From: Mizuhopecten yessoensis
Taxonomy: Eukaryota
DNA length: 64,000 bases
Direction of reading: 5' to 3'
Assembly (NCBI RefSeq): GCF_002113885.1
Contig: NW_018408750.1
Location: 66,168 to 130,167 of the forward strand
The position numbers and the translations under genes were made by a program. A model generated the notes under the pieces. That model was not told the origin of the DNA. It made no database searches and worked only from the letters and a program-made list of their open reading frames with translations. Below are positions 1,603 through 61,757 of this stretch, one piece after another. Each line of letters opens with the position of its first letter. Position 1 is the stretch's first letter.

Positions 1603-1636
1603 TCATTTACCAACAATAGGCTGAGACACGTTGCTC
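1603..1636 (-). CDS. CTL-1 exon 5 (C-terminal tail SNVSQPIVGK*)
   Basis: tctttttcag acceptor, phase 2 match, similar to paralog tails, downstream AATAAA. Confidence 0.8.
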
Positions 1637-4600
1637 CTGAAAAAGAATGTTCAGAAAAAATAAGGAACATATAGTTGAATTTGTAATTTTGTAAAATTGG
1701 TGTTATTGACTCAGTGACTTTTTTAACGTATTTACATAATAAGTATCTATAAGGATGCTGTTTTTGTGGTAATTATCTATACAAATGTATTTGTTCTTCT
1801 GCTTTTGGTATGTTTTTACAACGACTTTAAGTGCCTGCAGGTAGGGCGTACGAATTGTACCTGCTGCCCCCATTGCCTGATCGTAAGAGGCTACTAAATA
1901 TGGGAATTTATCTTTTCTCTTCTTTCTAAACAACTTTCTTCTTCCTAATGTCTGCTTTGACAATGCCTTCAGTTGAGCGTTCGCCCCTGTCCCCTAGCCG
2001 AGACATACCAGAGTCTGTCAACATGGTAGTTTCTACTCGTGCTTAACGCTCAGCAATTTAGGAGTGGGACGACTGGTTCGCCCGTTGTCAGTATAATGTG
2101 ACCGGGTGTGATGTCCTGCTGGGTGCCTTCGGCAGTGTGTTTAAGTGTGCATGTGGTAGTGCTATAAAGTCGGCATCAGTTCCGCGCTATCACAAGGAGA
2201 CAAACATGAACATATCGCAGCCTCCCAAAACACACACGAATACACTACACGCATGGATCTAGCACACAGGGGAGGCTGTCCTTAAATGACCATAAAAAAC
2301 AAACTAAACCAAACCAAACCAAACAACGACTTTAAACCATTGTTATGTTTATGTGAGTAAGTTATTTATTGTCCATGTCACAGTCAGTATTGAACCTTTA
2401 GGATCTAGTGGGGTATCTTAGCATCAATACATAACAGTAGAATTCGTTTTTGTTTTGTCCTCAGTTTTCAGTATTAACGGTCACCTTCAAAAATATTTTA
2501 ATCTTACGCAATTTAGGCCGCAAAATATGATGGCATATTACATTGATTTGCTTCATATTCGACACTTTTTTGATATAAGTGATATTAGATTAAACTCACA
2601 TAAGCAATTACAGGACATTTAAGTAATAATAGCACGAACAAATTTAAAGCCAGTTTGTTGATGCGATTTGAAATTAAATTATTCTCAATAACTCACATTT
2701 TTTCACATATAAAGTAATGACCGGCGCTGCATCTTTCGTCTTGCCAGACAAGATCATCTCCGTCCCAGTTTAGCATGAGACAGTTTTTGGACCAGTTTCC
2801 ATTCGGGAAGCCCGTATCCCACTTAGTAAAGGGCCCAGCATACTGACCAGTCTCTGCCCATCGGTACTGGCCTTCGAAGATGAAGTCGGTTCCACCAATG
2901 AAAAACGGGAAAATGTTGATGGCTGAGAATATAAATAGATAAAGGTTAAATTATTAGTCTTATTTATTCGACAATTGTATAAAAAAAACCACCCACTTAT
3001 AATCAGTTCTTAAAATAAGACTTCTCAAAGAGTTCAAAACCTCGGCAAATGTCCTCTATATCCTACACCATTATGCACGTGTGATATAGTCGTATAGTCT
3101 TACATAGCTGAAAGAGACTATATTCTATTGGTGAGTCCTCAATGTTGATTTACACTTGTGCTCGTTTATTTATTTTCGTCAATTTATGAAAGCTGTTGGC
3201 TAATGTTCTAATTAGTTATTTTTTTCTGTCAAAATACGAAACCAATATATGTTTTTTTCAAAAATGAATAACGCGACAAAATAGACCCCAAAAAATCATT
3301 TAACTTTGATCGTTCAAGCCTATAAATTCATTAGAAAAAGAAAATTTAGATAACTAGTTTTATTGTACAGAGTCGTGTGGTATTTGATTCTATTTAACGT
3401 TTCTCTAGTTTGACGACTGTTTCTTGTGCAAAACAATTTCTTACTTTTTGAGATTTCCGATAGAACTGTAATATAGATGTTAAGAAAAAATACTTTCCTT
3501 AACCCCAGGAATGCTTTCTAATGAGAAACCTAAAGTTAACGAATTATCTGAAATTCATTAACTTGGGCCTGGGTGAAACGTTGTGTCCCAAAACGGTCCG
3601 TGTATTTCCTATTTTCCTAATAATTTGATAATATTACAGATTAGACGTAATAGGCTGAGGTAATCGTACGTATTTTATCCTCACTGGATAAAAAGTGTAA
3701 CTCAGCCAAACTATTCACTTACTTTTCAGGACATTGGCGATGATATAGAGGAAGTCGTGTTTATCCTGGGTGTCATCAGACGCCAGCCACCCATGTAGCT
3801 TCTTGCACTCTATCTGCAAACAAACGGACACCCATTTCAAGCTTTCAAAGAAGAAATCAGACAATCTGCACAAAATGGGAGCGGCAACATCTGTAGGTGT
3901 GTCGGTGGCATTAACAGATGGCTGGAAGTCTATTATGAATGGTCAATTGATCAACACACATGCATTTATGAAATTGCGTCTGCAAATGGAACAGTAACAA
4001 TTTCACGTATTTCATAAATAATTTTATGACCTCAAATTCTTAATACAATGTACATTAGTTTAGTTTAAACGTATTTTATTGCAATATTATTACAAACGCA
4101 TTGAACAAAAGTTATTGCAACTTGAAAACGTTGTGTATTACTGTTTGCAAAGGCATTGCGGTTTGAGCGTATCCTGCTTGAAAAATCCCCAAGGAAAATA
4201 ATCTTAGTACGAGAAAAGAAGCGGGACTGTTTTATTTTTTTATTGAACACGAGCAAACATATCCCTTTTTATGTAACGGCAGATAGACAAAAAAATCCTC
4301 CCTCGGTTCTTTTAATTTCTTTATAAGCGTTACAAATAGAATATGTGTAATACAAGTGTAAACTCAAAAAAGTTGAGATTCATAAATTGTCATACATAAG
4401 GCTTGTTGAAGATTTTTCTACCCCGAGAGCTGAGATTCATAAATGATCGTATCGAAGGCTTGTACAAGATCGATCTACCCCAAGGGTTGATATTCATGAA
4501 TTGTCATACCCAAGGCTTGCAGGATCTTTAATTGATCCAAATGCTGAGATTTATAAAATGTTTTACCTAAGGTTTACAGATGTGTTTATTTATTCCATGG

Positions 4601-5624
4601 GTTGAAATAATACATTTTTATACCTAAGGCTGGCAGCTGTGTTTATTTATCTATTTATTTTATTTATTTATTAAGGGTTGAGATTATAAATTATCAAACC
4701 TAAAGTTCGTCGAAAAATATGTAATTTAAAAATCTTACTTCTAGGGTCGAGATTATTCCATTTCACGCATTTGTTTTTAAACATTTCAGAGGTAAATTTA
4801 CATAACAAACCTCGGCTGAATTCCAGTTGGTCCTCTGCGCATTGACATGGATGCAATTTTCCTTGAATTCCACCCATCCGTGTTCACATTCAGCGTGTAC
4901 CAAGGAGACCGCTAGTAAAACAATACGTTTGGTAAGTAACGTTGTCAATTCCTTGAAGGAACTACTTTTTGTTTGTAAAAGTTCATCTTAGATAAAGAAC
5001 AAAAATACACAAAACGGAGACGTCACATAGAAATGGACAAACATAAATATTAACCATAAAGAACGAGAAACGGAACTCATTGTCGACACTGAAAGAATAG
5101 AAATAGAATAGATACACCAAAACAAAAGGAAAAGACATGGAATCGATAAACATGACACCAGGTGGTAAGTTAAGCAAGTGTCATCGTCATGCTGTCTCCC
5201 AAAAATCCCTAGGAGAGTTCATGTCTGTCACCAACGATCGATAAAACAGGTAATTTACCGAAATATTCATAACATCACTTCATTCCGAAAATACTGATTA
5301 TTTAAAATCTTCACTCTTGTGATGTAATAATATGGTTAAAGAAAGGTCAATAAATTAAGTTGAAGTAAATACACGTAAGGCTTAACACAAAACAACCTTC
5401 TAGTCAAAAATGTACTAAGTACTAATTAGACTCTGGCCCCGGGATCGTAAACTTCGTCCATATATATCTGGCATATATAGATTAAAACTACTTTCGTTAT
5501 CATTTTTTTGTATATATTTCCATTAAAGTTATCTATTCTATCCGTTCAGACTAAGTCTGTCTAAAGATAGTACAGTATACTTACCGACAATAACACAAAG
5601 TATAACACATTCTTTTATATACAT
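1603..5624 (-). CDS. CTL-1: secreted perlucin-like C-type lectin, 5 exons, 163 aa, FPN/WQD motifs
   Basis: Exons 5624-5585, 4911-4811, 3813-3723, 2922-2697, 1636-1603; all GT-AG and frame-consistent (492 nt). Protein MYIKECVILCVIVAVSLVHAECEHGWVEFKENC...FFIGGTD...WDTGFPNGNWSKNC...WQDERC...FICEKMSNVSQPIVGK*. AATAAA at 1566-1571. Confidence 0.9.
1831..2322 (+). mobile_element. SINE-like retroposon (possibly composite) in CTL-1 intron 4
   Basis: 13-bp direct repeat ACAACGACTTTAA at 1818-1830 and 2323-2335; (CAAAC)n 3' tail; core TGCTTAACGCTCAGCA...GTCAGTATAATGTGACCGGGTG resembles bivalve Meta/Deu-type SINE cores (from memory). Confidence 0.75.
2697..2922 (-). CDS. CTL-1 exon 4 (CTLD core)
   Basis: FFIGGTDFIFEGQYRW...FPNGNWSKNC...WQDERC...FICEK; ttctcag and gtgagt boundaries. 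Confidence 0.95.
3723..3813 (-). CDS. CTL-1 exon 3
   Basis: IECKKLHGWLASDDTQDKHDFL...; 91 nt as in paralogs. Confidence 0.93.
4370..4710. repeat. Degenerate ~57-bp tandem repeat in CTL-1 intron 2
   Basis: Recurrent GTTGAGATTCATAAATTGTCATAC..AAGGCTTG units. Confidence 0.65.
4811..4911 (-). CDS. CTL-1 exon 2
   Basis: CEHGWVEFKENC...WNSAE; 101 nt as in all paralogs. Confidence 0.93.
5585..5624 (-). CDS. CTL-1 exon 1 (signal peptide)
   Basis: aaagATG...MYIKECVILCVIV followed by phase-1 gtaagt donor. Confidence 0.85.
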
Positions 5625-7665
5625 CTTTGCTATATTGTCGTGGCGGGTCTAGTTAGAAGACCTTGATGTCTCTACTATAGGGCACTATCAAACAGACCTA
5701 GATACACCGTTTAGAGCCGACCTCGATAGATAAAACTCTGTTCTTGTTATCAAACCATTTCTTGTGTTCCATTTACATAACAATCCTGTTCAGAACCTTA
5801 TAGATCTCGACATAGGTGACCCCTATTACCAACCATGTAAACCAGGACCCGTATTACTGAAATCGTTCTCATGATCGATCGTGGATTCGGTGCTCTACTA
5901 ACTTTCTTGTAACTTGCCTTTAACATTTGCAACGGTTAAAACTCAAGTATAGATATTACAACTGGTATTCAGCTTCACGCTTTGCAAAATCTTTTCAAAT
6001 CATCGACAAATGTGATTATGGCAGATTTTACAATATTCTTAAAATGAATCTACTATCAACCACCAAATTTTAGAACTCATTTTCTTTCATCAAAACAGAT
6101 TTTGTTTTGAAGTAGCAGTTCTTTGCAATATTTTATATCGTTATTCCTATACATACAATTCTCTTACCACATTTTCTTAAATCATTACCATGACAAGTCG
6201 GCACACACTATTTCAGTTTTTTCTTGACATACTTTCATTTGCTTGTTTTTAACATTCACACGTTCTTAAAACTCTTATTATGGGGTATATATGATAAACC
6301 TAGGTATAATTGGAGCAAAAAATATATCGAAAGTAAAGCATTTTTTTAATCTGCAGTACCTTATATTGTAAAGGACAGAATTTTTATCAAATAAAATATT
6401 TTAAGTTTCTGGTAACAAAATCACTTATATGCAATATGCTAGAACTCATTACATGTTTGCAAAATTAAGAATGGAACATAAGTGAACAACATTGTTAAAA
6501 TAAAACGAAACAAAAATGTCTTAAATTTTGATATTCGAAGTTATGTTGCCAACGTTACATTAGACAGATTATAGCACGACATCAGGACAGAATTATGTTA
6601 GCAACGTTAGGATTGATTACAAATGAATCCCATCAAACCTGTTGACTAATAGTCATAATGTTTGCAGAAGCTAACAAATAGTTAAATTTCAATCTAGTGC
6701 TATTTTTGAGTCAATACAACAAATCATTTTAGCACAGTGCTATGTTAGCAAAATGTGAACAGAACAGCATACACAAATTACATGTTCATCCTAGAAAAGA
6801 CTATTTGTATTTCATTAAAGCTAGGTATCATATATCATGATCTTAATCCAAGTAATGCTTTGTTGAATCTTTACATGTATATGTATTTAACAGATAATAT
6901 TGGAGATTTGAAATAGAATAGTATCCCCTTTGACTGTGTGATGCTACACTTGATGCACAAATTAGCTCTAGGTGATCATGATATTTCATCAAATGAACAA
7001 ATGGCCCTAGATTATACTTTCGCAGCTAAATTAACCATAATCATTTCTCATGACCCTAGCTAATAGGAAACTGATCCTACCTTTTAATTCCAAGATTAAC
7101 AATAGTAGTTATTTTGTAAGTTGTAAATATCTACTACAAATAAACTGTTGTTTATTATATACATAAGTTAAATTCCTCTGAAATAGCAGTTTTCACACTA
7201 GCAACACAATTTATATCTACTAATTAATAGCATAAGAAACATATTCTGTCCTAGTTGTAGTGTTTGAGCGTAATATCTGTCCATATTAGTAACATTAGCA
7301 ACAAATTGCACATAACAGACATCAAGAGTGATAAATAGGTATTGTATTATTTTGACTAACATTTAAATAATTCTTTCGTTTGTTTCAGAAATAAAGAAAA
7401 TTAACGGAGAATAAAAGAGAAATAAAATGTTCCAAACATTCCTTGTTGCTTTCATTACTAAAAGGACAGAAAGTAAATGAATATCAAATAATTTATTAAA
7501 GAAACAAACACTTTTTGTTTTGCTACCATTTGGTCCATATTGACCCTCTATATCAGCTGTGCTTACAGATGCTTACTGCAGGCAGTTTGTATATAATTAA
7601 CACACGGCAACATTTGGTGACATCAAACAGGACAGACGTTTCCAATGTTATGATAGCAACATTTT

Positions 7666-7859
7666 CCAATTCCTTCTTTTCGTAATGCAGAGTTATCTGC
7701 TCTTGTGAGCAGGTATTGATTGTTACGTCATTAGTTTGTGTGAGAAAATTACGTCGTTTTCTCAAAAATTCATGACGTTACTCTCATAAACTAATGACGT
7801 AACAGTCAATACCTGCTCACAAGAGCAGATAACTCTGCAATACGAAAAGACGGAATTGG
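7666..7859. mobile_element. Palindromic MITE / fold-back element
   Basis: ~80-bp inverted arms (GCAGAGTTATCTGCTCTTGTGAGCAGGTATTGA... / ...TCAATACCTGCTCACAAGAGCAGATAACTCTGC). Confidence 0.8.
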
Positions 7860-10800: not shown

Positions 10801-11049
10801 CATCTTTTCTTGTGTTTTGAAATAAAAGGACTAAGTGCATCTCTTTTCTCATCACCAGATATTAAAGTTGCATTAATGACAAAAAAATGGTTGTAAAAGA
10901 TAACCAGTCATATAGATGATTCATACTTCTATCTAGGTTACATTCATTTATTATCTATCCTTGTAACTCAGAGAAAGGCAATTTAAATGTAGATGTGTAG
11001 GTCTTCCAAGATACTCAACTGCCGCTATCAGACTCATCTCTAGTGTCGA

Positions 11050-12260: not shown

Positions 12261-12949
12261 ACAAGCGAGACCTGTTAAAAAAATCATAGGGAAGATAAAC
12301 ATTGCGTACGTTTAATTGGATATTGTGGAAGGTCAGGGAATATACATGTATAATACATAAGAGACAGCTTTGAGTGTTGGTTCGACGTTTTCCTTGTCAG
12401 ATGGTACGGTGAAATTAAACAGAGTTAATAACAAATGTTTATCTGTTCGATAGGCCCAAAACGATTTCCTTCATCCAGGAAAGGAAAATCGGCTGATTTT
12501 CCTACCGTTCATACCTTTCCTTTTTATTTGAAATATATTGGTTGAGTACTTTATACACTTAACACGTTAACAGTAGTTTGTCTAACTTTTTCTATTCATT
12601 GCATTTGAATGGCATACGGTGTGAACTTAAGAAAACATATTTATGAAGACCTTCTATAGCGTTAAAGTAGACCTGCCTTCTGTTCTTTCTCAGCGTTGAT
12701 TGGGACCTCGCAGGTAGTTACCCCTGGTAAGCTGTACAGCGCAAGGCGTAACGTAGGTAAACAATAAACAAGATGGTAGAATAGATATAATCAGGGTAAA
12801 ACAAAGTTCGAAATTATTTCTTATCTGACTCCAGGGTTAACTTAATTTTACTGTATTTTAATAAAAACAATCAAAATCATAATAGATTTTAAGTTTTCGA
12901 ATTTATTCATACTTTATGCACTACACTTAAACTGGTCCCTATCACTTCC

Positions 12950-12989
12950 TCACCGACGTCCAACAACCATCGATCCTCCATTGCTGACT
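12950..12989 (-). CDS. CTL-2 exon 5 (VSNGGSMVVGRR*)
   Basis: ttgcag acceptor, phase 2, paralog-like tail, AATAAA ~45 nt after the stop. Confidence 0.78.
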
Positions 12990-15900: not shown

Positions 15901-18900
15901 TAGACCTTGAAATTAACAATAGTTTCCATCCTTTCTTCACAGGTTTAACCTGTAGGCCTTGAAATTAACAGTAATTTTCACCCTATCGTCACTGGTTCAA
16001 CTTGTAGGCCGTGATATGTAAACACTAGTTTTCACCCTATCATAACAGGTTTAAGATCTAGACCGTGAAATGTTAACAGTAGTTTTCACCTTATTTTTAC
16101 AGGTTTAACCTGTAGGCCGTGAAGTGTTAGCAGTAGTTTTCACCCTTTTTTCATAGGTTTAACCTGTAGGCCGTTAAATGTAAACAGTAGTTTTCACCCT
16201 TTTTTGACAGTTTTAACCTGTAGGCCATGAGATTAACAGTAGTACTTACCCTATCTGCACACGTTTAACCTGTAGGCCGTGAAATGTTGCCAGTAGTTTT
16301 TACCCTATCGTCACTGGTTTCACGCATAGGAACAATGTAAAAGGATTGTTGAAGTATCAATCAGATACATTATATTTTTGGTTTACATAGGTCCTTTAAT
16401 AAGCGGCACACATGGAAAAATAAATAATTATATATTGTTTATTTTACTTACAGCTTTTCACAGATGTAGTTTTCAGCGCCATGTACGTGAGATTTGTTCC
16501 CGCTTGTTGGCCTGGTCGAAATGTGTCCGCAAGTTTCGTCAGACCATACTAGATTTCGATCATCCTGCCACTTAAGTGATAAGCAGTTCTTGGAGTTGTT
16601 TCCATCCGGTTCCCCAGCACCCCATTTGGAGAATGGACCAACGTGGATACCAGTTTCTAACCAACGCCACTGATTCTCAAAAGCAACGTCATTTCCGCCG
16701 ATGAAGAAATGATTGAAGTGGAAACCTATTATAACATTTGAATAAGAGAAAAAGACTAAGCAAGCCTTTCCCTTTACATGACCAAATGTTTTTGTTACAT
16801 GTTCCAAATTATCTTACTTACAGGGTATTTTTCTGCCGCAGGCCATTATTTATGTTGCCATTTACTTTATGTTCTTTCGGTATCAAATATTATTAAGCAA
16901 TCTTGAAAATGAAAATTCCAAAATATTGTATAATGGCGTCAATTTGAATCAGGGTTGATTTATATATCATAACCAGATAAGAAAATGACAAGATCTTACT
17001 TTTGAAGACATACAAGATATCGGAAATAAAATTGTGTTTATCTTCATTATCATCAGTCATCAGCCAGGCGTTGTGTTTGCGACAGTCCAACTGTAAGATA
17101 GAAAATAGAAAAACGTATACCTAATTGTTTACCGGACAATAATATTAAAAAAACATTTCCCATTTATACTGCAAACTTTAAGAATCGCCATGTCATTATT
17201 AACGCTGAAATTGCTTACTAATGCAACCGATACATTATTTCAGAAAATCGAAAATATAAATAAACTCAGATTCGGGATAGGGCAAATTTGTTTTTATAAT
17301 CCGTTACTTACTATAAATAATAGTAGACAAGCCTTGTACGCACTGATATATACTGACAAGAACAAGCTGTACCATGGACGGAGTGATGGCCAATATTCCA
17401 TTTTACAGTCAAATGTGGTGACAGTTGACATATCATTGGCTATTTCAGTGCAGGAAGAGTTTGTTTTAAATTGACAGTTGCTGATTCTTAGTTTTCCTGC
17501 ATTATCAGATTTACAATATTACTATATTATAACGGTGTCACCATAAGATCATACTGTAGAATGGTTGCTTCCGTTTTCTATATCATTCCGTTTTCTATAT
17601 CATTCCGTTAAGATTGCTAATCCATGTTTTTCAATCGTCCCTATTTGAGAATTATTTATTTTTTAAACACTTTAAAGACAAATTAGAAACAAAGATACTG
17701 ATGGATTCCGTTTGTCATATTTTATTATATACGGATAAATCCTATGCATATAACTGTACTAATGTCAACAATACACTCACAATAAATACCAAGTGCTAAT
17801 TGTAATGGGAGATCCCCAAACACACCCGCAGCTATGTTCGCAGTGCCAAAATACACATACATACCAATTTTGTGCAAAATCGACCAATATCTAAATTCGA
17901 CCAATCAGAGACCGTGGTGGCCATCACGGTTGACAAATCGGAAAATGATAGGTCATTTGCACACCCACTTACCATGATGAAAACTTGTGTAAAGTTTCAT
18001 TATTTTCCGTCCAATAGTTTTTGAGAAATGTGTCGACCAAAATGTTACGGCGGAACAAGAAGAAGAAGGATAATAATAATAAGTACTAATTGGGGACCAT
18101 TACAGAAGTCCCCCATAGTCATAAAGATGCATCAGAAAAGGATCGCAATGCCATAATACTCATACATACTAACTTTGAGTGAAATCGAACACTATATGAA
18201 TTTCGACCAATCAGAAGCCAGAATACCGCAGTAAGATTGTCGAAACAGAAAAAAGATGTCGCAGTTTGGTTCGCAGTGCCAAAAGACACCTACTTGTCTT
18301 ATCTTGTTTGGTATCTTCCTCCTAAAGTAGGAGAACCAGTATTCAGATACTGTATATGTATGTGAACTTACGTGTGTGAATGTAAACTACATACTAAATT
18401 TGAATGATATCAAACAAGGTATATATTTCGACCAATAAGAAGCCAGTATACAGTGGCCATTTTAGATGCGCAGTTGCGAAAATAGAAGAAGATGATAAAG
18501 AAGAAGAAGAAGAAGAAGAAGAAGAAACGGAGTAAAATCAATAATCACCCACTTCGTTTGGGGAACATTATAAACATTGGATAAGCATACGAATTCCTCT
18601 GTTTGCTTTAGGTTTACTTACTTCAGCATCGGTCCAGATCTTTTGAGTGTTACTGAACCAAATGCAGTTTTCTTTAAACTGGGTCCACCCTGGGTCACAT
18701 GCAGGATATACAACGCCCAAACCTGTATGGGACCGAATAAAAATGATAATACATTGTTGCATGTAAATTTGGTGGAGATTTACGAGGCGACTTTGACGGT
18801 CCATGCAACTTCCTCTCTCTGTATTACAAACAATACCAAGGAAATCTAGTAACACTGTTGATATAGATGTTTGGAAATTAGCTTGGAGACGTCATGGAAT

Positions 18901-20680
18901 TAATGATAATGTGACATAAATTCACTAAAAGGCTTTTCATATAAAAACAACTACAACCGCATAACGCATATGACCTTAGCATACCACTCATCCCCATACA
19001 GGTATAGTGGACATAAAGTAACAAGCGATTTAACTATTTTTGATAGTGCAAAATTACGAAAGCTTTCCATAAAGGCTTAACTATGGAGAAACTACCAATT
19101 AGAGTGTGAATTGCAAAATATTGATGAATATTGTTGAAAACTACGCCATAGAAAAGTTTTAAAAGACCACACTGTATAAGGTTCGCTTGAAAAGTGGATT
19201 ATAAATATTAGGTCCATCACTCAAAAAAGAATTAAGTGTTTGAAATATATTTTACTACATGTACGTAATATATTTTTGTCGGTAGTCAAAACGTCAATTT
19301 AATTAATCTTTGTCTGCAGACACTTTTATATTCCTGGTCACAGCAAAAAAATTGGCTTGCATTTTAATCAAAGAAACCCTTCCCAATATTCTCCAAAAGT
19401 GTTCACAAAACCATCATTATATTTGAACTCAAAATCGAAAACAACTATAGAACTCTATTGTTAAAAGAATGATGTGCATACAACAAAGGAGAATAGGACC
19501 AGGTGTTCCGGAAGTGTTCAGCGTCCTATTCAGGTCGTCCAGAAAGGGGTTAAGGGAAACAATTAGTCCAAATAGGAAAACCGCCATTTTCTGAAATGTC
19601 TCGTCTCCTGATGATCAATCTTCAGCATCCTCTCCTCAAACTGTTTCTTCTGTCACAACATTGGGCTTTTCCTTATCAACGCGACCATACCTCCACATGT
19701 ACCAAACCTTTTTTCTCTTATACTGATAGGTTTCCTTTCACGAAAGGCTAACAGAGATATTAATAAGACAGGTAGGTGTTAACATTGCTGACTTGTTTTT
19801 GCTTACATGTGAAACTCAGTTTATTAAAAAAGGTAACCAGGACAAGAAATACGTACCCAGCTGATCTTTATTCAAGAACATTACTGACTACACTTGTCTT
19901 GATTGCAACTTACAATATGACCAACATGGACGGTTTACTCCAGAGCTGTACGATAAACGTGCTGATTTTTAGTAGATATTGTTTTATCATGCTCGCAAGT
20001 TTTGTTATTTCTTTCTCCTTACTCCTCATTCTTCATATTTTGCCCTAGTTTTATCGATTTATGGTTTTGTTTTCACTAGGAAATTCCCTTGTTTTCATGT
20101 AGATGTTCACAGATGATCATATGCTATAACAGTACAATACTAATACATGTTAGGTTACAGATAAAATACATTCACTGATAAAGAAGTTCGAATTTTACAA
20201 TAATATGAAATGTTCTGATACTAAGCTATCATTGTTGTCAATATAGTTATTTATGTTGTTTTAATAGTGTGGATGTATTGTTAAACAGTTATTGTTGCCA
20301 CTTTTGTTCGTATTTCATCCTTGTTAATGTCACCCTGGTAAAATACTAGCCGCTTCCTACCGACTCGGCTAGGGATAATTTCACTTTAAAGCGCATTCGG
20401 TAGAGCGTAAGACTAGTAAGCCAGAGGTCCCGGGTTCGACTCCTGGCGGAGGCACTGGCAAAATTACGACCTCTGTAACTTTAATTTAACCCACATAATC
20501 ACGCGGTTATGATTTAAAGTGAATGTGTGTTGATATTTATATAAACGAGCAGATGAAAGTTCTCAATAAACAATTCGATAACAGCAATATGGATTGCAAA
20601 CGAAAATTAAGTTCATTCAAAAGAAAAGGAACAAGAACAGAAACCTTACCACAAATCAAAAGTGCTATAACTGCCTTCAT
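12950..20680 (-). CDS. CTL-2: secreted C-type lectin, 5 exons, 178 aa, EPD/WSD motifs
   Basis: Exons 20680-20650, 18722-18622, 17090-17000, 16725-16452, 12989-12950; GT-AG, 537 nt. MKAVIALLICGLGVVYPACDPGW...GEPDGNNSKNC...WSDETC...NYICEKLVSNGGSMVVGRR*. AATAAA at 12902-12907. Confidence 0.88.
13095..16320. repeat. 54-bp satellite with 321-bp (6-mer) higher-order repeat, filling CTL-2 intron 4
   Basis: Monomer GGTTTAACCTGTAGGCCGTGAAATGTTAACAGTAGTTTTCACCCTGTCTTAACA; diagnostic TCTAGACCGTGAAATTGAC variant at 13431, 13752, 14073, 14394, 14715 and 15036. Confidence 0.95.
16452..16725 (-). CDS. CTL-2 exon 4 (CTLD core with 15-aa insertion)
   Basis: FFIGGNDVAFENQWRW...EPDGNNSKNC...WSDETC; gtaagt donor. 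Confidence 0.95.
17000..17090 (-). CDS. CTL-2 exon 3
   Basis: LDCRKHNAWLMTDDNEDKHNFI; 91 nt. Confidence 0.93.
17788..18570 (+). mobile_element. Non-autonomous Helentron/HINE-like element(s) in CTL-2 intron 2
   Basis: Internal repeats with TCGACCAAT(C)AGA, (GAA)n tract, 3' short hairpin CCCACTTCGTTTGGGG. Confidence 0.5.
18622..18722 (-). CDS. CTL-2 exon 2
   Basis: CDPGWTQFKENC...WTDAE; 101 nt. Confidence 0.93.
20390..20454 (+). pseudogene. tRNA-Thr(AGT)-like pseudogene or SINE head
   Basis: GGTAGAGCG D-arm, CT-AGT-AA anticodon loop, GGTTCGACTCC T-arm/B box; the 5' acceptor strand does not pair with GGAGGCA. Confidence 0.6.
20650..20680 (-). CDS. CTL-2 exon 1 (signal peptide)
   Basis: MKAVIALLIC followed by phase-1 gtaagg donor. 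Confidence 0.85.
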
Positions 20681-39370: not shown

Positions 39371-39976
39371 CGATGATAAAATATCATGATAAAATGATGA
39401 TAAACGATTATTATATATGAATTTGATGTTGGAGTATAAGGATAGTATATCACTTGATGAGTAGCCTATGTATGCATTTTTTTTTTTTGGGATAGAATCA
39501 TATGGGTTAGTAATTGTGCACTGTTCCTCCCAATAGGTTACAAATGTACATGTAAATTGTAATTTGCATTGCCCGAGATCAGGTATTTCTCAACCTTTAA
39601 TAATGATAACGACAATAATGTTTTCAGGATACCTGAAACTATGTAAAACTTTTATTTGTTTTGATGATTTTTTTTTCTTCATGTTTTTTTGCAAAGTGTG
39701 AATGTGTTAGAGAAAAACAGGAGTATGTTTACTGACCAGGGGGCAATGGCATATCAAATAGAATCAAGACATTTTGTTGTCGATATGGCGGACAATGAAT
39801 GTGTCGCTTGTTAGCCTATCATCAGAATATATTCTTGAACATCCGATATTTTGACAAATCTATTTGTTTACACATACAAAGTTCGTAAATGATAGATTGC
39901 ATGGTTTGAATAACAATAAAATACAATTCAAATTCAACGTTTTATTAGATTCGTTCTGATGATAGAGAGAACATGT

Positions 39977-40010
39977 TTATCCTATCACCCCATTTGTCAC
40001 GTCTGTGGCT
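39977..40010 (-). CDS. CTL-3 exon 5 (ATDVTNGVIG*)
   Basis: ttcctttcag acceptor, phase 2, AATAAA downstream. Confidence 0.82.
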
Positions 40011-46000: not shown

Positions 46001-49000
46001 TTTATTTTACCAGCATGTTTAACAAGCATTGAAAATCTAAACATTGACAGTAGATCTTAATTTAAAGCAAAAATACCCTGTCAGATATTTGTTCAGAGGT
46101 CATGTAACGGTACATGTAGTACTGTTAATATCATGCAAACATTTTAAGTTGGTACTATCTAGAGGCACTGCAACACAAATGTAAATATTAATGAATAGCT
46201 TTACAATTTGAATGTTAACACCTTGTGAATAATAGTGTTTGATATAAGATAACAAAAACTATGTTATTGTCGATCTACTAAAGAACGATTTATTAAAAAC
46301 TGATTGCTAGTTAACATTTTACTTACCGTTAAAGATGTTGATGTACATCTTGATGAAGTCATGTTTTTCTTGGTTATCGTCGGTAACTAGGTAACTACCT
46401 GTAGGACGATTTCTGCAGTCGTTCTGTTCATATATAATACAGTCTTATAATAACACACATATCAATCAAGTCAACTGAATCTAATTTATTTCATTTACTG
46501 TCAAATACATAACATGCAATATATATGTAATCTTACATGAGTTTCCATTTAATATGAGATTTATGAAACGGGTCTAAGAATTTTTCAATTTAGCGAGCCT
46601 CTGGCGAGCTAAAATAAAATATTCCTGACGAGTTTCATAAATTTCATATGAAATGAAAATGAGTGTTAGATCATTTTTATCACATAATTAAGAGTTGTGG
46701 CATTCATTCGTGTAAAACGACAATTTCCATGCAACCTTGAAATGTAAAAAGCCGCTATTTTGACTCCAGTGCGTAAGTCTGTTGTCATGTACGTGTCCTA
46801 GGCATGACGTAACAATTGACACTTACAAGCAATCACAGGGCTGATAGGTCATATTACATGGGTAATTTTCACTGGATAAAACAGTACATTATATGATAAA
46901 AAAACGTTACAAATAATGGTACAATATTATGTAAAATGTGCCGAGCTATGAATGGCTTAGATAACTAAAATCAGTTGAAGTCTGTAATGTCTATTAACTG
47001 CAATGATAAAACTATTTGACGAATTGTTATGAAATTCCTGGTGCGCTTTATGATGGGAGACACACACGAGTGATTAGGCAGCACCTACGTACAGTATATG
47101 TGTGTCTCTCCCACCCCAGGTCATATTGCTGATTACTTTAGAAATGACATGACCTGCAACCCTGCGCTAATCACGTCATAAACGGGATGTGATACATATG
47201 TATCCACCATAAATAATTGGTAAATTAATCAAACATTGCTTGCATCATTAATTTGTAATATTTGTGTTTGCTTACTTATTACTTTATCATTTTGTTTAAT
47301 TCATGTATATATATATATATATATATATAAGGGGCAAAGCAGTAATTCCAAGTGTTGACAAGTTTAGGTTGTCAAATTTTCGGAGCGTTCCGCTCCTTTT
47401 TCAAGACACAGTGAAACAGAACAGTTACATGTATATATACATCATATTACAAGACGATAGAATCGATATACTATAATTAAAAATATAGCTATTATATAAA
47501 ACCAATAGTCCCCTCGGCTAAAGACAGCCGAAAGCAGCAATTACGCTGAGAGCATCGCGGCAAAGGAACGCTGATGATATATATATACATAAATATATAT
47601 ATAAGGCGCCATCTTTATTCCATAAAAGATAAAAATTATGTGATTATAATTTCGTATAAACATGTACATGTGATTGATTACAAAAGAAAAAGAAACCTCA
47701 ACTTCTTATTCCCAAGTTTTCAAAATACATAAAAATAATATCTAACTCCGGAAAACTTCAGCCGTCAACCGCTTTTTACAGAGGCAAAAGCCACAGGACA
47801 ATCATACCTCAGCTGCATGCCATTCCATCGCATGTGGCGAAAAATAAAGACATTCACCATCATACTCAACCCATTCAGAAGGGCAGGTACTCATCACCAG
47901 CACCAAACCTGTAACACATAAAACAGGTCATAGGTCATAGATCACAGGTCATAAGTCATTGATCACATGTCATGTCATAGATCACAGGTCATAAGTCATT
48001 CTGATTTAAAATCCTTTAAATCAAATATTTGAATTTTCATTTATCTGGAAACTGTTATATATCTCTTATAACTACTACCAAAAAAAATTAACACCGTCAA
48101 CACAACAGAACTATTTCAACGCCGACGTCGTATGGCGGATTTGCCGATAATCGATAAAAGGTCAGAGGTCAAGTATGCAGAAGTGCGTCATGACGTCATT
48201 GCTTTACCGATGGAAAGACTTGTTTTTCTTCTCACGGGTGAATGCATGTCCTACACGGGCGAGCATAGGAGAAGGAAATGTCTTACATTCCTATTTTGGG
48301 AATGAAAGAAAGCGTTTCCAGGACGATATATAACACCCGTCGATAAGTTATTCACCTTTATCATGTATTTAATGTCAATGTATGCACTATTAAAATAAAC
48401 TCGTTTTAGGTCTGACAATATTACCGTTTAAATTTATAAATATGAATATCTTCGAAATGTGACATCTTATAGATTGAATGTTGTAACCACTTGAGCGGAT
48501 CCTTAACCAGGAGATATAACTGAGCGAGCGTACAGTGGTATTTTTTCCAGCTGATATATTATTGGGTGAGGGTACAATGGCTTTCCAATTGCTAACATAA
48601 ATAGGTGATTATTATGAAAAGTTCTTTTTTACACAACCAATAAAAAAAAATCTATGTGACGTTTCGATGACTAGTACGATATGTACACTGTCACCTTCAT
48701 CAGACAAATGGCCAGTGAAGCGTATGCACACAAAGGTGTAACATGTGTACGCGTTGTCCACAAAATCGATGTCGATTTCGGCTACGCTCTCGCACATCTA
48801 TGACCAAGTATTAAACAAAGCGGAGCTGGATCGAGTCATTTCGGTACATATATGACAACTATTGTACATAAGCTTACAGCGTAGCCGAATCGACATCGAT
48901 TTTGTAGACAACTCGTACGCTTCACTGGTCATTTTTCTGATGAAGGTAACAGTGTACATATCGTACTAGTCATCGAAACGTCACATAGATTTATTTTTAT

Positions 49001-49235
49001 TGGTTGTGTAAAAAAGAACTGTTCATAATCCATACTTACCAACCCGAAGAAAATGTTTAGAAATATAAATAGGTGAGCTTTTAATTAACTTATTTCGCCG
49101 ACATTCTTACCGGGTATTAGTTGTCTTTTATTAGATAACATTAATGTAAACATAATGTATAGATGAAATGAAGAAATGCCGATATAAATGAAAGTTACCT
49201 GAACACAGCAGGAGAGGAAGCAGAGTAAAAGCCAT
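39977..49235 (-). CDS. CTL-3: secreted C-type lectin, 5 exons, 165 aa, QPD/WKD motifs
   Basis: Exons 49235-49199, 47908-47808, 46423-46327, 41182-40954, 40010-39977; GT-AG, 498 nt. MAFTLLPLLLCSGLVLVMSTCPSEW...GQPDGNSSANC...WKDDRC...FICEQRATDVTNGVIG*. AATAAA at 39941-39946. Confidence 0.9.
40170..40296. repeat. 39-bp tandem repeat x3 in CTL-3 intron 4
   Basis: TGATGTTTTTACACGTGAAAAGGGGAAACGTCTTTAAA-like units at 40182, 40221 and 40260. Confidence 0.85.
40954..41182 (-). CDS. CTL-3 exon 4
   Basis: FWTGGSDFIIENNWRW...QPDGNSSANC...WKDDRC; 229 nt. Confidence 0.95.
42105..42770. repeat. 27-bp CpG-rich minisatellite in CTL-3 intron 3
   Basis: TCGTGACGAGAGAGGTCGATATTTAAG-like units. Confidence 0.9.
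43655..43913. other. Assembly gap (N run)
   Basis: Run of n. Confidence 0.99.
43970..44430 (+). pseudogene. Crypton-type tyrosine-recombinase fragment (DUF3504/ZMYM-KCTD1-like), frameshifted and truncated
   Basis: NKNTARKT...RFFMNVRKNDKSEYEPSSLRCLQSSINRYL then F..SRDVLSAKMKNLKTQGKGNRPNAADSL...LYEKGALG; frameshift near 44272. Confidence 0.8.
44828..44968. mobile_element. Crypton-type terminal hairpin
   Basis: ~55-bp stem centred on GGCCTTCGGCC followed by TGATAATCTCTA. Confidence 0.7.
46327..46423 (-). CDS. CTL-3 exon 3
   Basis: NDCRNRPTGSYLVTDDNQEKHDFI; 97 nt. Confidence 0.92.
46520..46900. mobile_element. Crypton-like MITE in CTL-3 intron 2
   Basis: Imperfect hairpin ATATGAGATTTATGAAAC...GCGAGCCTCTGGCGAGC...GTTTCATAAATTTCATAT; TTTATCA and TGATAAA ends. 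Confidence 0.55.
47370..47408 (-). ncRNA. Putative minimal type I hammerhead ribozyme (U3-A8 variant), Penelope-like
   Basis: Minus strand UGUC-UUGAAAA-A-GGAGCG(GAA)CGCUCC-GAAA-AUUU-GACA: stems I and II pair perfectly. Confidence 0.55.
47808..47908 (-). CDS. CTL-3 exon 2
   Basis: TCPSEWVEYDGEC...WHAAE; 101 nt. Confidence 0.93.
48655..48706 (-). ncRNA. Putative minimal type I hammerhead ribozyme
   Basis: UGU-CUGAUGA-A-GGUGAC..GUAC(AUAUC)GUAC..GUCAUC-GAAA-CGUC-ACA. Confidence 0.6.
48934..48985 (+). ncRNA. Second, more degenerate hammerhead copy
   Basis: CUGAUGA at 48937-48943 and GAAACGUC at 48975-48982; mismatches in stems I and II. Confidence 0.4.
49199..49235 (-). CDS. CTL-3 exon 1 (signal peptide)
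   Basis: caaacATG MAFTLLPLLLCS followed by phase-1 gtaact donor. Confidence 0.87.
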
Positions 49236-57694: not shown

Positions 57695-57737
57695 ATGGCT
57701 GCTTCGTGGCTCCTCTACACCTACCTAGCTTTTTCAG
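57695..57737 (+). CDS. CTL-4 exon 1 (signal peptide)
   Basis: caaaATG...TCAG|gtaaat. Confidence 0.88.
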
Positions 57738-60700
57738 GTAAATTTAACTTGGCATAGAAATAATTCATTACAAACAGGCTTAGAAAAGATCATATTCATT
57801 GTTTACTATGAGAACATTTTTTTCTTGTTTTCATAGAGTAACACTTTTAATTAATAAACAACGCATATATCAAATATTCAAACAGGTGTCCAACTGAAGC
57901 AGATAAGTATTTTGCACACGGCCAAATCAGATTTGTATTTCTGTTCACTACTTTGATTTCGTGCCGTGCTGCATGTATTTCAGGTTGATCTGGATGCTGA
58001 TTTCTTACCGTGTAATTGTCTGGTTGATTAGGAAATTGTTTTCATACCTAGCCATTGTAGGTCGATCTGGATATTATTTTTGAGTTGATGTGGATGTTGA
58101 ATACGTGGTATCGTGACTTTTAAGTCTGAAAAATGTAACATTGACTGAAATATGATAATCGCCATTGCATAGAGTTCGGAGAAATCTCCGTGCTGCAGCA
58201 CGTCGCCTTACAACGCATATTGTGTATCGGTAAGGAAACTTTACATTTTGGTTGCTTTAGAAAGCAATTCTTACTTCTAAATAAACATAAAATCTACTTT
58301 CTCGATTACAATAACATTGGCTATTGATGAAATAACTGTATTTTCAGGCTTCGTTGTTGTTCTCAGCACTTGCCCAGTAGGATGGATAGAGTTTGATCAG
58401 GAATGTTTCTTGTTCGGGTCACACAAGAAAACGTGGAATGATGCAGAGGTAGGACCTCACGCAGTATAACATTATTGTATTAAATTACATGTAATATAAT
58501 GTATGATACATATTATATTGTATTATTATGTATTTATCATATTGTATTACAATTTGATATCTCATTACATGTATAATATAATATGATATCTATTATATTG
58601 TATAATTATGTATTTATCATATTGTATTACAATTTGATATCTCATTACATGTATAATATAGTGTGATACATATTATATTGTATTATTATTATTATATATT
58701 TATCATATATATTGTATTACAATTTTATATTGTATAACATTTATTAATTGTATGAAATCTATTATAATGTATTATGATTATATATATTAAATTGTATTAC
58801 ATGTTTATATTGTATTACATAGTTCTCATAGTATTAACTTTGTATGTTTATGTATGCTATTTTATGTATCACGTGACTTACCACCTGCTAACTTGTAATG
58901 TAATGGCCGATACACTTTCTGTGATGTCATGGTTTCTTTATGTCAAATCGTTTTTGATATTTATGTTATGCTATAATAGCAAATCAATATATCACGTCAA
59001 TATTTCAAGATAAGTACTGAGATTTGCCTTTTCATGTTTTTTTCATATTTTGTTTGTTAACCTGTAAGAGCAGTGTCTGTATGTCAGAGTTTTTCTTCGT
59101 GACTTCCTTTCCTTTCCATAACTGTCCATGCCCTCTTCTTCTGCCTCAAATCTACAGGTATCTGTCACACTCAACAGATCATCCTGACGTCCGTATTCTG
59201 CCTACCATTCCGTTCCTTCCCTCGACTATCGTTTCCCGTCTGATGTCAGGCGGAACCTCGATACTTATAAACACTAATGTTTGTTTTATCTTTACAGTTA
59301 GATTGTAGGAAACACAGCAGCTATCTGACTACAGACGATAATCAAGAAAAACACGACTTCTTTCATAAATTTCTCAACATTTTCCACTGTGAGTGTCACC
59401 TGATTATATAGTTCATCATGTTCGCATAAACTATTTAATAGTTTCTATATGTACATGTAAATGACAGCATAGAACCCGTTTCTTACGATATAGAAGCCAT
59501 GTAATGGTGTTCCGTTACCTACTAAACGCTGCTTAGATATACCAAAACAATAACCTATTTTACCGATGCTTCATCTGTATCTGAACAGAAAATCGGTCAA
59601 TTAGTTTAAACAATATTTATTGAAGAATAAAGAAGTACAATATATATGTACATTTGTATATATCAAGAATACGATTTGGTAGCATCGATGACTTTAAATG
59701 AAGTGAATAGAAAGTGTCGATATTATTGGTCAATACCAAAATTGATATTTTTACACTGTTACAACTATCACTTTTGATATCTGTAACATATTGAAAGACA
59801 TAAGTATTATCCAAATGTTTGAAAATTTTATATTTTTCTGACAAAAATGTAATATAAACATAATTATTATTGATAAAGGAGGCGATCCTGTATCAAAACG
59901 AGTCTGGGTGTTAACTGCATGTAGGTCGTGCATCATTAACCAAAATATATAAAAAATATTTTATAAGCAGACAGTTCTTGTTTTCAACTTCAGAAATATA
60001 ATATTCATACCAAGAAAAAATCGGGAATCTCATAATTATGCTATGAAGTTTTTACAACGTCCATTGAACATATTTTTTCCGAGAATAACTCTATTCGTGT
60101 TTTTGGAAACAGCATGGAGGTTGGGCCACTTCTGGCTAGGAGGGGCTGACCAGGTTATAGAAAATCAATGGCGCTGGTTAGAGACGGGTACAGCAATAGG
60201 GTCCACTACCTACTGGGACCAAGGTCAACCGGACGGCAATTCCTCCGCTAACTGCATGTCGTTCTACATGAACGCTGACAACGACCTTGTATGGAGAGAC
60301 GACCGATGTTCGGGCCATTACAACTACATCTGCGAGCAACCGTCAGTACACTTGGTTTAATGGTTAAGGGTCATCATTATGTCTCTTTGCTGGATATCTC
60401 AAAAATATAACATACCGAGTGAAATTATGTTAGCGCTGTCAAAGCTTATTTATAAATCAAAATAATAACAATTATTTAATAATACAAAACAAAATGTTTT
60501 GCCCAGCCTGAATCGATATTTCATGAACATTTTGGTTTCTTTTTACTGACTTTTCCTAAAGTAGACAATGTGTCCCAGGTATTATCTGTATTAACTCTTC
60601 TACTTAGAGTCAACCACAAAAACACCTTTATATTAACACATAACTGATAATGTGTAACAAAACACAATACTTACCTAGTTCTTAACAGCATATATCCAAA

Positions 60701-61757
60701 AACACGAACAGCTCAAAACACTGTAAACCGAGAGTACCCGACACGACGAAACATCACAAACCATTTATGACATTATCGCCGATCACACCAGAACATGAAA
60801 ACAGTAAAATATACACGTGTTATCACAATAACTCCGGACCTATGATCCCGTATATATATATCTCACCTATTTCCGCTCTTATGATTATGTAAAATTATAA
60901 CTATGGAAAACCTATCTTGGTAAATCTTCGAAGCTATTCGACAACTTATACTAATTATGATATGCATCTTATTACCATTTAAAGATGAAAAAGTTTTCGA
61001 AATTTAAAAAAAATAAAAAATGTTTGTAAGTCTATGAAATTATGTCTATATATTGAAACCTGTTTATTAGTCTATATATTATAAGTGTATAGGTCAATAT
61101 AAAATCTGTTATACAGTGTACGTTCATGTATTCATCTATCATAAAAATGTGTGTATACGTCTACCTTAAATATAATGTGTTATACATATCCATATATGAT
61201 GTAATATGTTTATGCACTCAGGTAAAATATAATGTGTCTATAGGTCTATGTTGTTGCGGGTATTTCGAAAAATGACCTACACTAAGAAAATAAACCTAAG
61301 TGAAAAAAGTAAAAATGATATAAAGCGGTTACGTAACATTATCTTAATTTCTTTTATTCCGATACAAAACCCTTCAGTTCAGAATTGGATAGTCGTTACT
61401 ACACGTAGCAATACCAGTAAAAACTACAAGTACTCGATTTTTGTGCAAAGAAGAAACATTTATTTTATAACAGTTACAAAACACTATATCGGATTACATG
61501 TATTGAAATAAATAGATCACCTTCGACATCATCTTCATATTAAAACAGACTGTCATGCAACTACATGCATAAGATGTTGTTCACTGTAAAACAGGTGTCT
61601 TGTATGATGTCATTTAGACCTTAGATATAAGTAATGCAATAATGTATTTGTTTGTGTGTTAAAATAGTTCCTTTTGCTAAATTGCCAATTTTAGTATATT
61701 TTTTCCTTTTCTAATTACAGCGCCACTAGTAATACATCGTCGCCGGTAATAGGATAA
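57695..61757 (+). CDS. CTL-4: secreted C-type lectin, 5 exons, 166 aa, QPD/WRD motifs
   Basis: Exons 57695-57737, 58348-58448, 59298-59388, 60113-60341, 61721-61757; GT-AG, 501 nt. MAASWLLYTYLAFSGFVVVLSTCPVGW...GQPDGNSSANC...WRDDRC...YICEQPATSNTSSPVIG*. AATAAA at 61807-61812; TATAA at 57645. Confidence 0.92.
58348..58448 (+). CDS. CTL-4 exon 2
   Basis: TCPVGWIEFDQEC...WNDAE; 101 nt. Confidence 0.93.
58483..58740. repeat. AT-rich ~80-bp tandem repeat x3
   Basis: ATTACATGTA.. units at 58483, 58564 and 58644. Confidence 0.7.
59298..59388 (+). CDS. CTL-4 exon 3
   Basis: LDCRKHSSYLTTDDNQEKHDFF; 91 nt. Confidence 0.93.
60113..60341 (+). CDS. CTL-4 exon 4
   Basis: FWLGGADQVIENQWRW...QPD...WRDDRC; 229 nt; gtcagt donor. 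Confidence 0.94.
61721..61757 (+). CDS. CTL-4 exon 5 (ATSNTSSPVIG*)
   Basis: Strong polypyrimidine tract and ctaattacag acceptor; AATAAA downstream. Confidence 0.85.

What the first reader, a model, noticed from the sequence alone, without database searches (positions are those of the whole stretch)
1603..61757. All four lectins end in a dedicated micro-exon encoding a putative C-terminal amidation signal
Seen: each gene has a 34-40 nt last coding exon outside the CTLD, ending PIVGK* (1603-1636), MVVGRR* (12950-12989), GVIG* (39977-40010) or PVIG* (61721-61757). The linker diverges freely while hydrophobic-hydrophobic-Gly is kept, followed only by a stop or basic residues. Established: X-Gly-(K/R)n at the C-terminus is the substrate pattern for carboxypeptidase E plus PAM alpha-amidation of secreted peptides. 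Inference: all four mature lectins would end in [IV][IV]-amide, which suggests a neuropeptide-like modification or a granule-sorting/assembly tag on immune or shell lectins. I am not aware of this being described for C-type lectins.
Basis: partly seen in the sequence, partly recalled or inferred. Interest (0 to 1): 0.75.

Follow-up and report, generated by a model that had tools for sequence, protein, structure and literature searches.

The report
Scallop lectins carry an amidation-type tail
Four neighbouring scallop C-type lectin genes, and their relatives in oysters and mussels, end in a tiny separate coding exon whose last residues (Val/Ile-Val/Ile-Gly, then nothing or only Lys/Arg) look exactly like the signal for C-terminal amidation, a modification known from peptide hormones but not described for lectins; the exons are real, the amide itself is still unproven.

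Summary
The window is Yesso scallop (Mizuhopecten yessoensis) DNA. It holds four paralogous five-exon genes for secreted single-CTLD lectins.

- **Gene structure.** In each gene a GT-AG intron splits the codon just after the last-Cys motif C-E-K/Q, leaving two of its bases upstream. The last coding piece is 34-40 nt, with a good acceptor and AATAAA 31-50 nt after the stop.
- **Support.** Public annotated proteins match three genes exactly. An RNA contig shows the fourth gene's junction.
- **Assembly gap.** It lies inside an intron of gene 3 and does not touch the reading frame.
- **Extension beyond the window.** The same intron and tail exon occur in an oyster and a mussel. In 29 tails from scallops, oysters and mussels the end is always [VI][IV]-Gly. 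What follows Gly is a stop (18), K, R, RR, RK, or RR plus a short extension, and never a non-basic residue directly. The linker before it varies freely.
- **Context.** The tail is predicted disordered. The species makes amidated peptides.
- **Prior description.** I found no paper describing this for C-type lectins.

C-terminal amidation is the best explanation (about 0.55), but no protein-level evidence exists. The main rival is a free-acid docking tail. This would be a new variant of a known mechanism, and mass spectrometry can test it.

The parts
1603..1636 (-). gene 1: coding part of the last exon (1 nt completing Met, then 10 codons ending I-V-G-K, then stop)
   Evidence: Spliced to 2697 in RNA contig X2 record 13 (23 nt on this side).
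1566..1571 (-). gene 1: AATAAA, 32 nt after the stop
2697..2922 (-). gene 1: exon 4, the second half of the CTLD. It ends 2 nt into the codon after C-E-K, at donor GTGAGT. Reading through the donor gives a stop at once.
   Evidence: (Lectin_C E 3.3e-5)
3723..3813 (-). gene 1: exon 3
   Evidence: (X2 record 13)
4811..4911 (-). gene 1: exon 2 (101 nt, as in the three paralogs)
5585..5688 (-). gene 1: exon 1 (5' UTR, start codon, hydrophobic signal-like leader)
12950..12989 (-). gene 2: coding part of the last exon, ending V-V-G-R-R then stop
   Evidence: Matches P0006 exactly.
12902..12907 (-). gene 2: AATAAA, 43 nt after the stop
16452..16725 (-). gene 2: exon 4, donor GTAAGT, two bases of the split codon upstream, intron 3462 nt. 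Reading through the donor gives a stop at once.
17000..20680 (-). gene 2: exons 1-3 (20680-20650, 18722-18622, 17090-17000) with their introns
39977..40010 (-). gene 3: coding part of the last exon, ending V-I-G then stop
   Evidence: Matches P0004 exactly.
39941..39946 (-). gene 3: AATAAA, 31 nt after the stop
40954..41182 (-). gene 3: exon 4, donor GTACGC, two bases of the split codon upstream, intron 943 nt
46327..49235 (-). gene 3: exons 1-3 (49235-49199, 47908-47808, 46423-46327). Intron 3, between 46326 and 41183, holds the assembly gap 43655-43913.
57695..59388 (+). gene 4: exons 1-3 (57695-57737, 58348-58448, 59298-59388)
   Evidence: Matches P0001.
60113..60341 (+). gene 4: exon 4, donor GTCAGT, two bases of the split codon upstream, intron 1379 nt
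61721..61757 (+). gene 4: coding part of the last exon, ending P-V-I-G then stop
61807..61812 (+). gene 4: AATAAA, 50 nt after the stop

Best explanation
**Shown.** The four genes encode small secreted C-type lectin-domain proteins of 163-178 residues. Each has a signal-like leader and one CTLD. After the CTLD comes a flexible tail of 10-13 residues, often rich in Ser, Thr and Asn, encoded on its own last exon. The tail ends in Val/Ile-Val/Ile-Gly, followed by a stop or by Lys/Arg only. This architecture is old: oyster and mussel relatives share it.

**Inferred mechanism.**
1. In the late secretory pathway a carboxypeptidase of the E/D type removes the trailing Lys or Arg where present (genes 1 and 2).
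2. Peptidylglycine alpha-amidating monooxygenase (PAM) then converts the exposed C-terminal Gly into an amide on the preceding Val or Ile.
3. The mature lectins therefore end in a neutral, hydrophobic, exopeptidase-resistant Val/Ile-amide on a flexible stalk.

**Weaker inference on purpose.** The capped tip probably serves as a docking or self-association element and protects the tail from carboxypeptidases in mucus, digestive fluid or haemolymph.

**Modularity.** Because the tail sits on a separate last exon, it can be dropped or exchanged. Retaining the intron gives a stop at once in genes 1 and 2. An oyster gene has two alternative last exons.
For: **The exons are real.**
- Exact match of P0001, P0004 and P0006 to five GT-AG exons with identical phases.
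- RNA contig with the gene 1 junction.
- Acceptor and polyA signals at all four.
- The same intron, splitting the same codon, and a 34-55 nt coding tail in Magallana gigas and Mytilus galloprovincialis.

**The motif is under selection.**
- In 29 tails the residue before Gly is I (19) or V (10). The one before that is V (15), I (11), or A, M or L (one each). Positions -3 to -6 are variable.
- After Gly come stop (18), RR (6), R (1), RK (1), K (2) and RRHSRH (1). No non-basic residue ever follows directly.
- The state after Gly changes between close relatives. Gene 1 has G-K, but the Argopecten gene beside the gene 2 ortholog ends V-V-G-stop. Two tandem Mytilus neighbours end I-I-G-stop and I-I-G-R-R-stop.
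- The motif occurs in all major clades of the family tree.
- As background, only 11 of 131 multi-CTLD relatives end in G[KR]0-3.

**Accessibility.** The AlphaFold model has a confident CTLD, and the last six residues score below pLDDT 50.

**Machinery.** The same genome has PHM-like exons whose best solved match is PAM. Amidated peptides were confirmed by MS in this scallop (PMC5996578).

**Precedents.** A folded secreted glycoprotein ending P-G-K becomes Pro-amide, reportedly through PAM (IgG heavy chain, PMC6343775). Tachycitin, a 73-residue chitin-binding haemocyte protein, is amidated (PMC10608444). Gly plus a dibasic site is read as an amidation site in mussel gill peptides (PMC12294457).
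Against: - There is no protein-level evidence for any family member.
- PAM substrates are typically peptides. Amidation of the antibody precedent is a minor variant with no known effect.
- The producing tissue and secretory route of these lectins are unknown. One polyA RNA run did not express gene 1.
- Several relatives lack the motif: tails ending T-S-S, S-K-K or S-S-S, P-V-Y, and I-V-N. It is therefore not essential to the fold or to secretion.
- The 29-tail profile was built from tails chosen for having the motif. The invariance of Gly in that table is circular. The real evidence is the share of gene groups with the motif (about 14 of 18) and what follows Gly.
- The number of independent events behind the 'basic only' pattern is uncertain (about 6-8).
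Confidence: 0.55

Rival explanations
1. The conserved Val/Ile-Val/Ile-Gly is a docking or strand-addition motif that works as a free acid. Trailing Lys/Arg are trimmed by carboxypeptidases or simply tolerated, and Gly stays on the mature protein. No amidation takes place.
For: The hydrophobic pair is as strongly kept as the Gly. Amidation alone does not require that, since as far as I know PAM accepts many penultimate residues. CTLD N- and C-termini lie close together, so a tail could pack on a partner. The tissue and secretory route are unknown.
Against: It gives no reason why Gly is never replaced by Ala or Ser. It also does not explain why only basic residues, or RR plus an extension, follow it. 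AlphaFold does not dock the tail on its own domain, but that says nothing about partners.
Confidence: 0.25
2. The tail is mainly a glycosylated spacer or protease buffer. Its ending is conserved for some other reason, for example efficient termination, RNA processing of a very short last exon, or an unknown sorting receptor.
For: Many linkers are rich in Ser, Thr and Asn, and some carry N-x-S/T sequons. In the triplicated tail exon of a paralog, conservation extends a few bases past the stop.
Against: The Gly codon varies between genes and species (GGT, GGA, GGC), as do the Val and Ile codons. The constraint therefore acts on the protein, not the RNA. The linker itself is not conserved.
Confidence: 0.12
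3. The tail is cut off and acts as a free amidated peptide, making the gene a lectin-peptide hybrid precursor.
For: The ending is neuropeptide-like. One relative has RR plus an extension after the Gly.
Against: No dibasic site separates the CTLD from the tail. The peptide body is not conserved even among scallops. Only the last three residues are kept.
Confidence: 0.04
4. The micro-exons are prediction artefacts, and the proteins really end at the CTLD.
For: Reading through the donor gives an immediate stop in genes 1 and 2. Some database entries end right there. One X1 contig runs unspliced across 1412-1782.
Against: RNA contig with the junction. Conserved intron position, acceptors and polyA signals in scallop, oyster and mussel. 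Conserved tail motif.
Confidence: 0.03

Closest known systems
Glycine-extended precursors of amidated peptides (substrates of carboxypeptidase E/D and PAM; the pattern x-G-[RK]-[RK], which I recall as the PROSITE amidation site)
   Same: Secretory proteins with a C-terminal Gly that is exposed directly or after removal of Lys/Arg. One relative even has G-R-R followed by a short extension. The residue before Gly is hydrophobic, which from memory PAM favours.
   Different: The body is a folded, disulfide-bonded domain of about 16 kDa, not a short peptide. No processing site releases a peptide. Only gene 2 fits the strict dibasic pattern.
IgG heavy chain C-terminus P-G-K (Lys clipping, then Gly loss with Pro-amide; PMC6343775)
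   Same: A large folded secreted glycoprotein whose flexible end, Gly-Lys, is trimmed and amidated, reportedly by PAM. This shows that size is no bar.
   Different: There it is a minor variant with no known effect. Here the motif is conserved across three bivalve orders, which implies function.
Tachycitin and other amidated haemocyte-granule defence proteins of horseshoe crab (PMC10608444)
   Same: A carbohydrate (chitin)-binding, disulfide-rich immune protein with a C-terminal amide that matters for activity.
   Different: It has 73 residues and an unrelated fold, comes from an arthropod, and has no dedicated tail exon known to me.
Myticalins, mussel gill antimicrobial peptides with Gly before a dibasic site (PMC12294457)
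   Same: Bivalve mucosal secreted products in which Gly plus basic residues is read as an amidation signal.
   Different: They are short linear peptides released from a precursor, not lectin domains.
Perlucin (Haliotis nacre CTLD protein), the source of the database label 'perlucin-like'
   Same: A single secreted mollusc CTLD with a short C-terminal extension after the C-E-K motif.
   Different: From memory, perlucin's extension is a pair of 10-residue repeats and does not end in Gly. A role in shell formation is not shown for the scallop genes.

Membership tests
C-type lectin-like domain proteins (Pfam PF00059) | Significant match to the Lectin_C profile over the whole domain | tested here: met
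   P0001 4.6e-14, P0004 6.7e-14, P0006 1.4e-8, gene 1 exon 4 alone 3.3e-5, all above the cut-off; the best solved relatives are Mincle, MCL, mannose receptor and DC-SIGN CRDs.
C-type lectin-like domain proteins (Pfam PF00059) | CTLD fold with the conserved Cys framework | tested here: met
   Cys and Trp columns are invariant; the model is confident over the domain (mean pLDDT 82). I did not run a fold search.
Ca-dependent sugar-binding CTLs | Site-2 tripeptide (EPN or QPD) plus the W-N-D motif | tested here: inconclusive
   QPD in genes 3 and 4, EPD in gene 2, FPN in gene 1. The W-N-D position reads W-R/K/S/Q-D. Binding was not tested.
PAM substrates (amidated secretory proteins) | Entry into the secretory pathway | tested here: inconclusive
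   Hydrophobic N-terminal leaders seen by eye. No signal-peptide predictor was available.
PAM substrates (amidated secretory proteins) | C-terminal Gly, free or followed only by basic residues | tested here: met
   The strict x-G-[RK]-[RK] pattern is met only by gene 2.
PAM substrates (amidated secretory proteins) | Amidating enzyme present in the organism | tested here: met
   Cu2_monooxygenase exons in the same genome, one with PAM as best solved match (E 7e-6, weak). Amidated peptides confirmed by MS in this species (PMC5996578).
PAM substrates (amidated secretory proteins) | Co-expression with PAM and passage through a PAM-containing compartment | not testable with these tools
   Run and tissue labels are coded, and I had no expression atlas.
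PAM substrates (amidated secretory proteins) | Amide on the mature protein | not testable with these tools
   This needs mass spectrometry of native protein.

The most novel reading that the evidence does not exclude
A whole, ancient subfamily of folded C-type lectins in scallops, oysters and mussels is matured to a Val/Ile-amide C-terminus. The tag sits on its own last exon, so cells can add, drop or swap it by intron retention, alternative last exons or duplicated tail exons. This would be the first conserved, functional C-terminal amidation of a lectin domain. It would also tie innate-immune or mucosal lectins to the regulated, granule-type secretory pathway.
Probability: 0.4. Interest if true: 0.75.

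Novelty: new variant of a known kind. Interest (0 to 1): 0.62.

Why it matters
- **A new class of substrate.** Amidation is treated as a hallmark of peptide hormones, toxins and antimicrobial peptides. A conserved amidation-type signal on a 16-kDa lectin domain, kept through the split of scallops, oysters and mussels, would widen the set of PAM substrates to folded recognition proteins.
- **A practical consequence.** Bivalve C-type lectins are usually studied as recombinant bacterial proteins, which could never carry this modification.
- **Clues to cell biology.** It would point to where and how these lectins are stored and released, and it offers a simple handle (the Gly) for experiments.
- **Easy to test.** Existing proteomic data can be searched again with one extra variable modification.

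Tried and rejected
- **Protein searches.** Word-based searches with single exons returned few hits (5, 7 and 14). The exhaustive representative search was dominated by multi-CTLD giants. The family survey therefore rests on about 30 genes, not hundreds.
- **Gene 1.** I did not search its joined protein, because spliced models were to be searched exon by exon. Gene 1 therefore has no database protein id. Its frame was checked exon by exon and in the RNA contig.
- I redid the profile from references.
- **Raw reads.** Run X24 did not cover gene 1 outside an intronic repeat, so I have no read-level count of splicing against intron retention.
- **Paralog without a tail.** For the paralog on L009 I found no convincing tail exon within 6.9 kb.
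- **Lookup failures.** The look-up of encoding contigs could not return the scallop's own gene 5. I fetched it from the genome instead.
- **Literature.** Searches for amidation together with C-type lectin, perlucin, scallop or mollusc found nothing on point. Two recent bivalve CTL reviews do not mention amidation or this tail. Subscription journals are not covered.
- **Earlier scan notes.** They held nothing on this topic.
- **Ideas rejected.** A GPI signal is excluded because nothing hydrophobic follows the Gly. A released neuropeptide is unlikely because there is no cleavage site and the peptide body is not conserved.
Full report
**1. What is in the window**

The window has 34% GC and two N runs: a single N at 870 and the gap at 43655-43913. 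A self-comparison of open frames found four sets of three CTLD-coding pieces, three on the minus strand and one on the plus strand. Searches with single exons, given by reference, returned annotated proteins of the Yesso scallop Mizuhopecten yessoensis. P0001, P0004 and P0006 map residue for residue on genes 4, 3 and 2. The window is contig C5423:66168-130167 of that genome.

**2. Checking the observation**

- **Intron structure.** For genes 2-4 I fixed every exon border by requiring GT-AG introns and an exact match to the annotated protein. All three have five coding exons and intron phases 1,0,1,2. The last intron (943-3462 nt) splits the codon that follows the C-E-K/Q motif after its second base.
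- **Gene 1.** An RNA-seq contig of run X2 (record 13, depth 27.8) carries 5585-5688, 4811-4911, 3723-3813 and 2697-2922. It then jumps to 1636 with CT..AC ends, which is GT..AG on the minus strand.
- **Limit of the RNA evidence.** Only 23 nt lie on the tail side, below the tool's 31-nt bridging rule. The contig stops next to a synonymous variant at 1612, which may explain the break. The jump is exactly the one predicted from the sequence. Translated exon by exon, the frames are consistent, with the same phases and the same 101-nt exon 2.
- **Signals.** All four tail pieces have pyrimidine-rich CAG acceptors and AATAAA 31-50 nt after the stop.
- **Wording.** The 'micro-exon' is the 34-40 nt coding part of a short but ordinary last exon.

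**3. The assembly gap**

The gap lies in intron 3 of gene 3, between 46326 and 41183. The exons on both sides are in the right order and strand. P0004 runs across the intron without losing a residue relative to its paralogs. Nothing in the finding depends on the gap.

**4. Is the tail more than chance? Relatives**

- **Scallop orthologs.** Those from Ylistrum, Argopecten and Pecten keep the ending while the linker changes.
- **Other bivalves.** The exhaustive representative search, cluster look-ups and a profile search added oysters (Magallana, Ostrea, Saccostrea) and mussels (Mytilus edulis and M. galloprovincialis).
- **Same genome.** It holds eight genes of this subfamily. Five are on this contig, including a fifth just right of the window that ends A-I-G-R-R. 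Three are on contig C690.
- **Profile of 29 tails, taken from references.**

| Position | Residues |
|---|---|
| -1 (before Gly) | I 19, V 10 |
| -2 | V 15, I 11, A/M/L 1 each |
| -3 to -6 | variable |
| After Gly | stop 18, RR 6, R 1, RK 1, K 2, RRHSRH 1 |

- **Circularity.** These tails were picked because they have the motif, so the invariant Gly in this table is circular. The non-circular points are the following.
  - About 14 of about 18 gene groups that have an annotated tail carry the motif.
  - Nothing but basic residues ever follows the Gly directly.
  - The state after Gly flips between close relatives. Gene 1 has G-K, but the Argopecten gene beside the gene 2 ortholog ends V-V-G-stop. 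Two tandem Mytilus genes end I-I-G-stop and I-I-G-R-R-stop.
- **Chance estimate.** A stop codon mutating to a sense codon gives K or R in roughly one case in five (my estimate from the codon table). Six to eight such events all giving basic residues is unlikely without selection.
- **Background.** 11 of 131 multi-CTLD relatives end in G[KR]0-3.
- **Tree.** A tree built without the tail columns shows the motif in all major clades, so the tail is probably ancestral to the subfamily.

**5. Gene structure elsewhere**

In Magallana gigas (L001, L003) and Mytilus galloprovincialis (L002) the last intron splits the same codon at the same point. The tail is again a separate 31-55 nt coding piece with its own AATAAA.

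With two bases of the codon upstream, a GTAAGT, GTGAGT or GTAGGT donor reads as x-x-G followed by TAA, TGA or TAG. Intron retention would therefore give a tail-less lectin that ends one residue after C-E-K. This holds for scallop genes 1 and 2 and for the oyster and mussel genes. Several database entries end at exactly that point.

One oyster gene has two annotated alternative last exons, one ending I-I-G-K and one ending P-V-Y. A scallop paralog has three tandem candidate tail exons, each ending I-I-G or V-I-G. The tail behaves as an exchangeable module.

**6. Does amidation fit?**

- **Established knowledge.** A C-terminal Gly, free or uncovered by carboxypeptidase E/D removing K/R, is the substrate of PAM.
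- **Tested here.**
  - The tail is predicted disordered, with the last six residues below pLDDT 50 on a confident CTLD.
  - The genome has Cu2_monooxygenase exons, one with PAM as its best solved match (weak, E 7e-6).
  - Amidated peptides were confirmed by MS in this scallop (PMC5996578).
- **Precedents from papers.**
  - The IgG heavy chain ending P-G-K becomes Pro-amide, reportedly through PAM (PMC6343775).
  - Tachycitin, a 73-residue chitin-binding protein, is amidated and needs the amide for activity (PMC10608444).
  - Gly plus a dibasic site is read as an amidation signal in mussel gill peptides (PMC12294457).
- **From memory.** PAM favours hydrophobic residues before Gly, and several hormones end in Val- or Ile-amide.
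- **Not shown.** That these lectins meet PAM, or that they carry an amide.

**7. Verdict**

I put C-terminal amidation at about 0.55. It alone explains both the invariant Gly and the basic-only residues after it. The main rival, at about 0.25, is a free-acid hydrophobic docking tail whose basic residues are trimmed or tolerated. A glycosylated spacer with some other constraint, a released peptide, and an annotation artefact are less likely.

I found no description of this in the searchable literature, which does not cover subscription journals. It is a new variant of a known mechanism, of moderate to good interest, and directly testable by mass spectrometry.

Noticed in passing
L003:8621-8675 and L003:9417-9447 (Magallana gigas): One oyster gene of this subfamily has two annotated alternative last exons spliced to the same donor. 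One ends I-I-G-K and the other P-V-Y, each with its own AATAAA. This could be a switch between an amidation-type tail and a non-Gly tail.
   Followed up: partly
L008:6150-6192, 5872-5908, 5668-5704 (own genome, contig C690, minus strand): There are three tandem copies of a candidate tail exon downstream of one CTLD exon. The acceptors are near-identical. Each starts with an N-V-T sequon and ends I-I-G or V-I-G then stop. The exon and its immediate flanks are the best-kept part of the repeat unit. Which copies are used is unknown.
   Followed up: partly
window 2696, 16451; L001, L002: Because two bases of the split codon lie upstream, GTAAGT, GTGAGT and GTAGGT donors create an in-frame stop right after the exon. 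Intron retention would give a lectin lacking only the tail. Several database proteins end exactly there.
   Followed up: partly
window about 1790-2380 (last intron of gene 1): This is a repeat with very high depth in RNA runs (up to about 1e5 word depth in X1). It has many variants and loose ends, as expected of a dispersed, transcribed mobile element.
   Followed up: no
window 2762-4931 (run X3, record 19): An 831-nt contig joins the end of gene 2's exon 4 to gene 1 at 4931 and uses odd borders (3894, 4788). The junction has no GT-AG, so an assembly chimera or template switch is more likely than a conjoined transcript.
   Followed up: partly
window about 21400-25300 and 27800-39400: Two large tandem-repeat arrays lie between genes 2 and 3. 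They gave thousands of hits in the self-comparison.
   Followed up: no
window 16452-16725; P0009-P0011, P0100, L009: Many members carry a His-rich insert (runs such as H-H-H-H) between the last two Cys of the CTLD, just before the final strand. It could be a metal-binding loop.
   Followed up: no
window 49235 and 57695: Genes 3 and 4 are head to head. Their start codons are 8.4 kb apart, with the stretch between them noted earlier in the scan as a LINE.
   Followed up: no
window 1612: An A>G variant in run X1 falls on the third base of a Val codon of the gene 1 tail and is synonymous.
   Followed up: no
G000:C5485 (several places): One contig holds a cluster of at least six Cu2_monooxygenase-type exon sets. 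This suggests a tandem expansion of PHM/DBH-like genes in the scallop.
   Followed up: no
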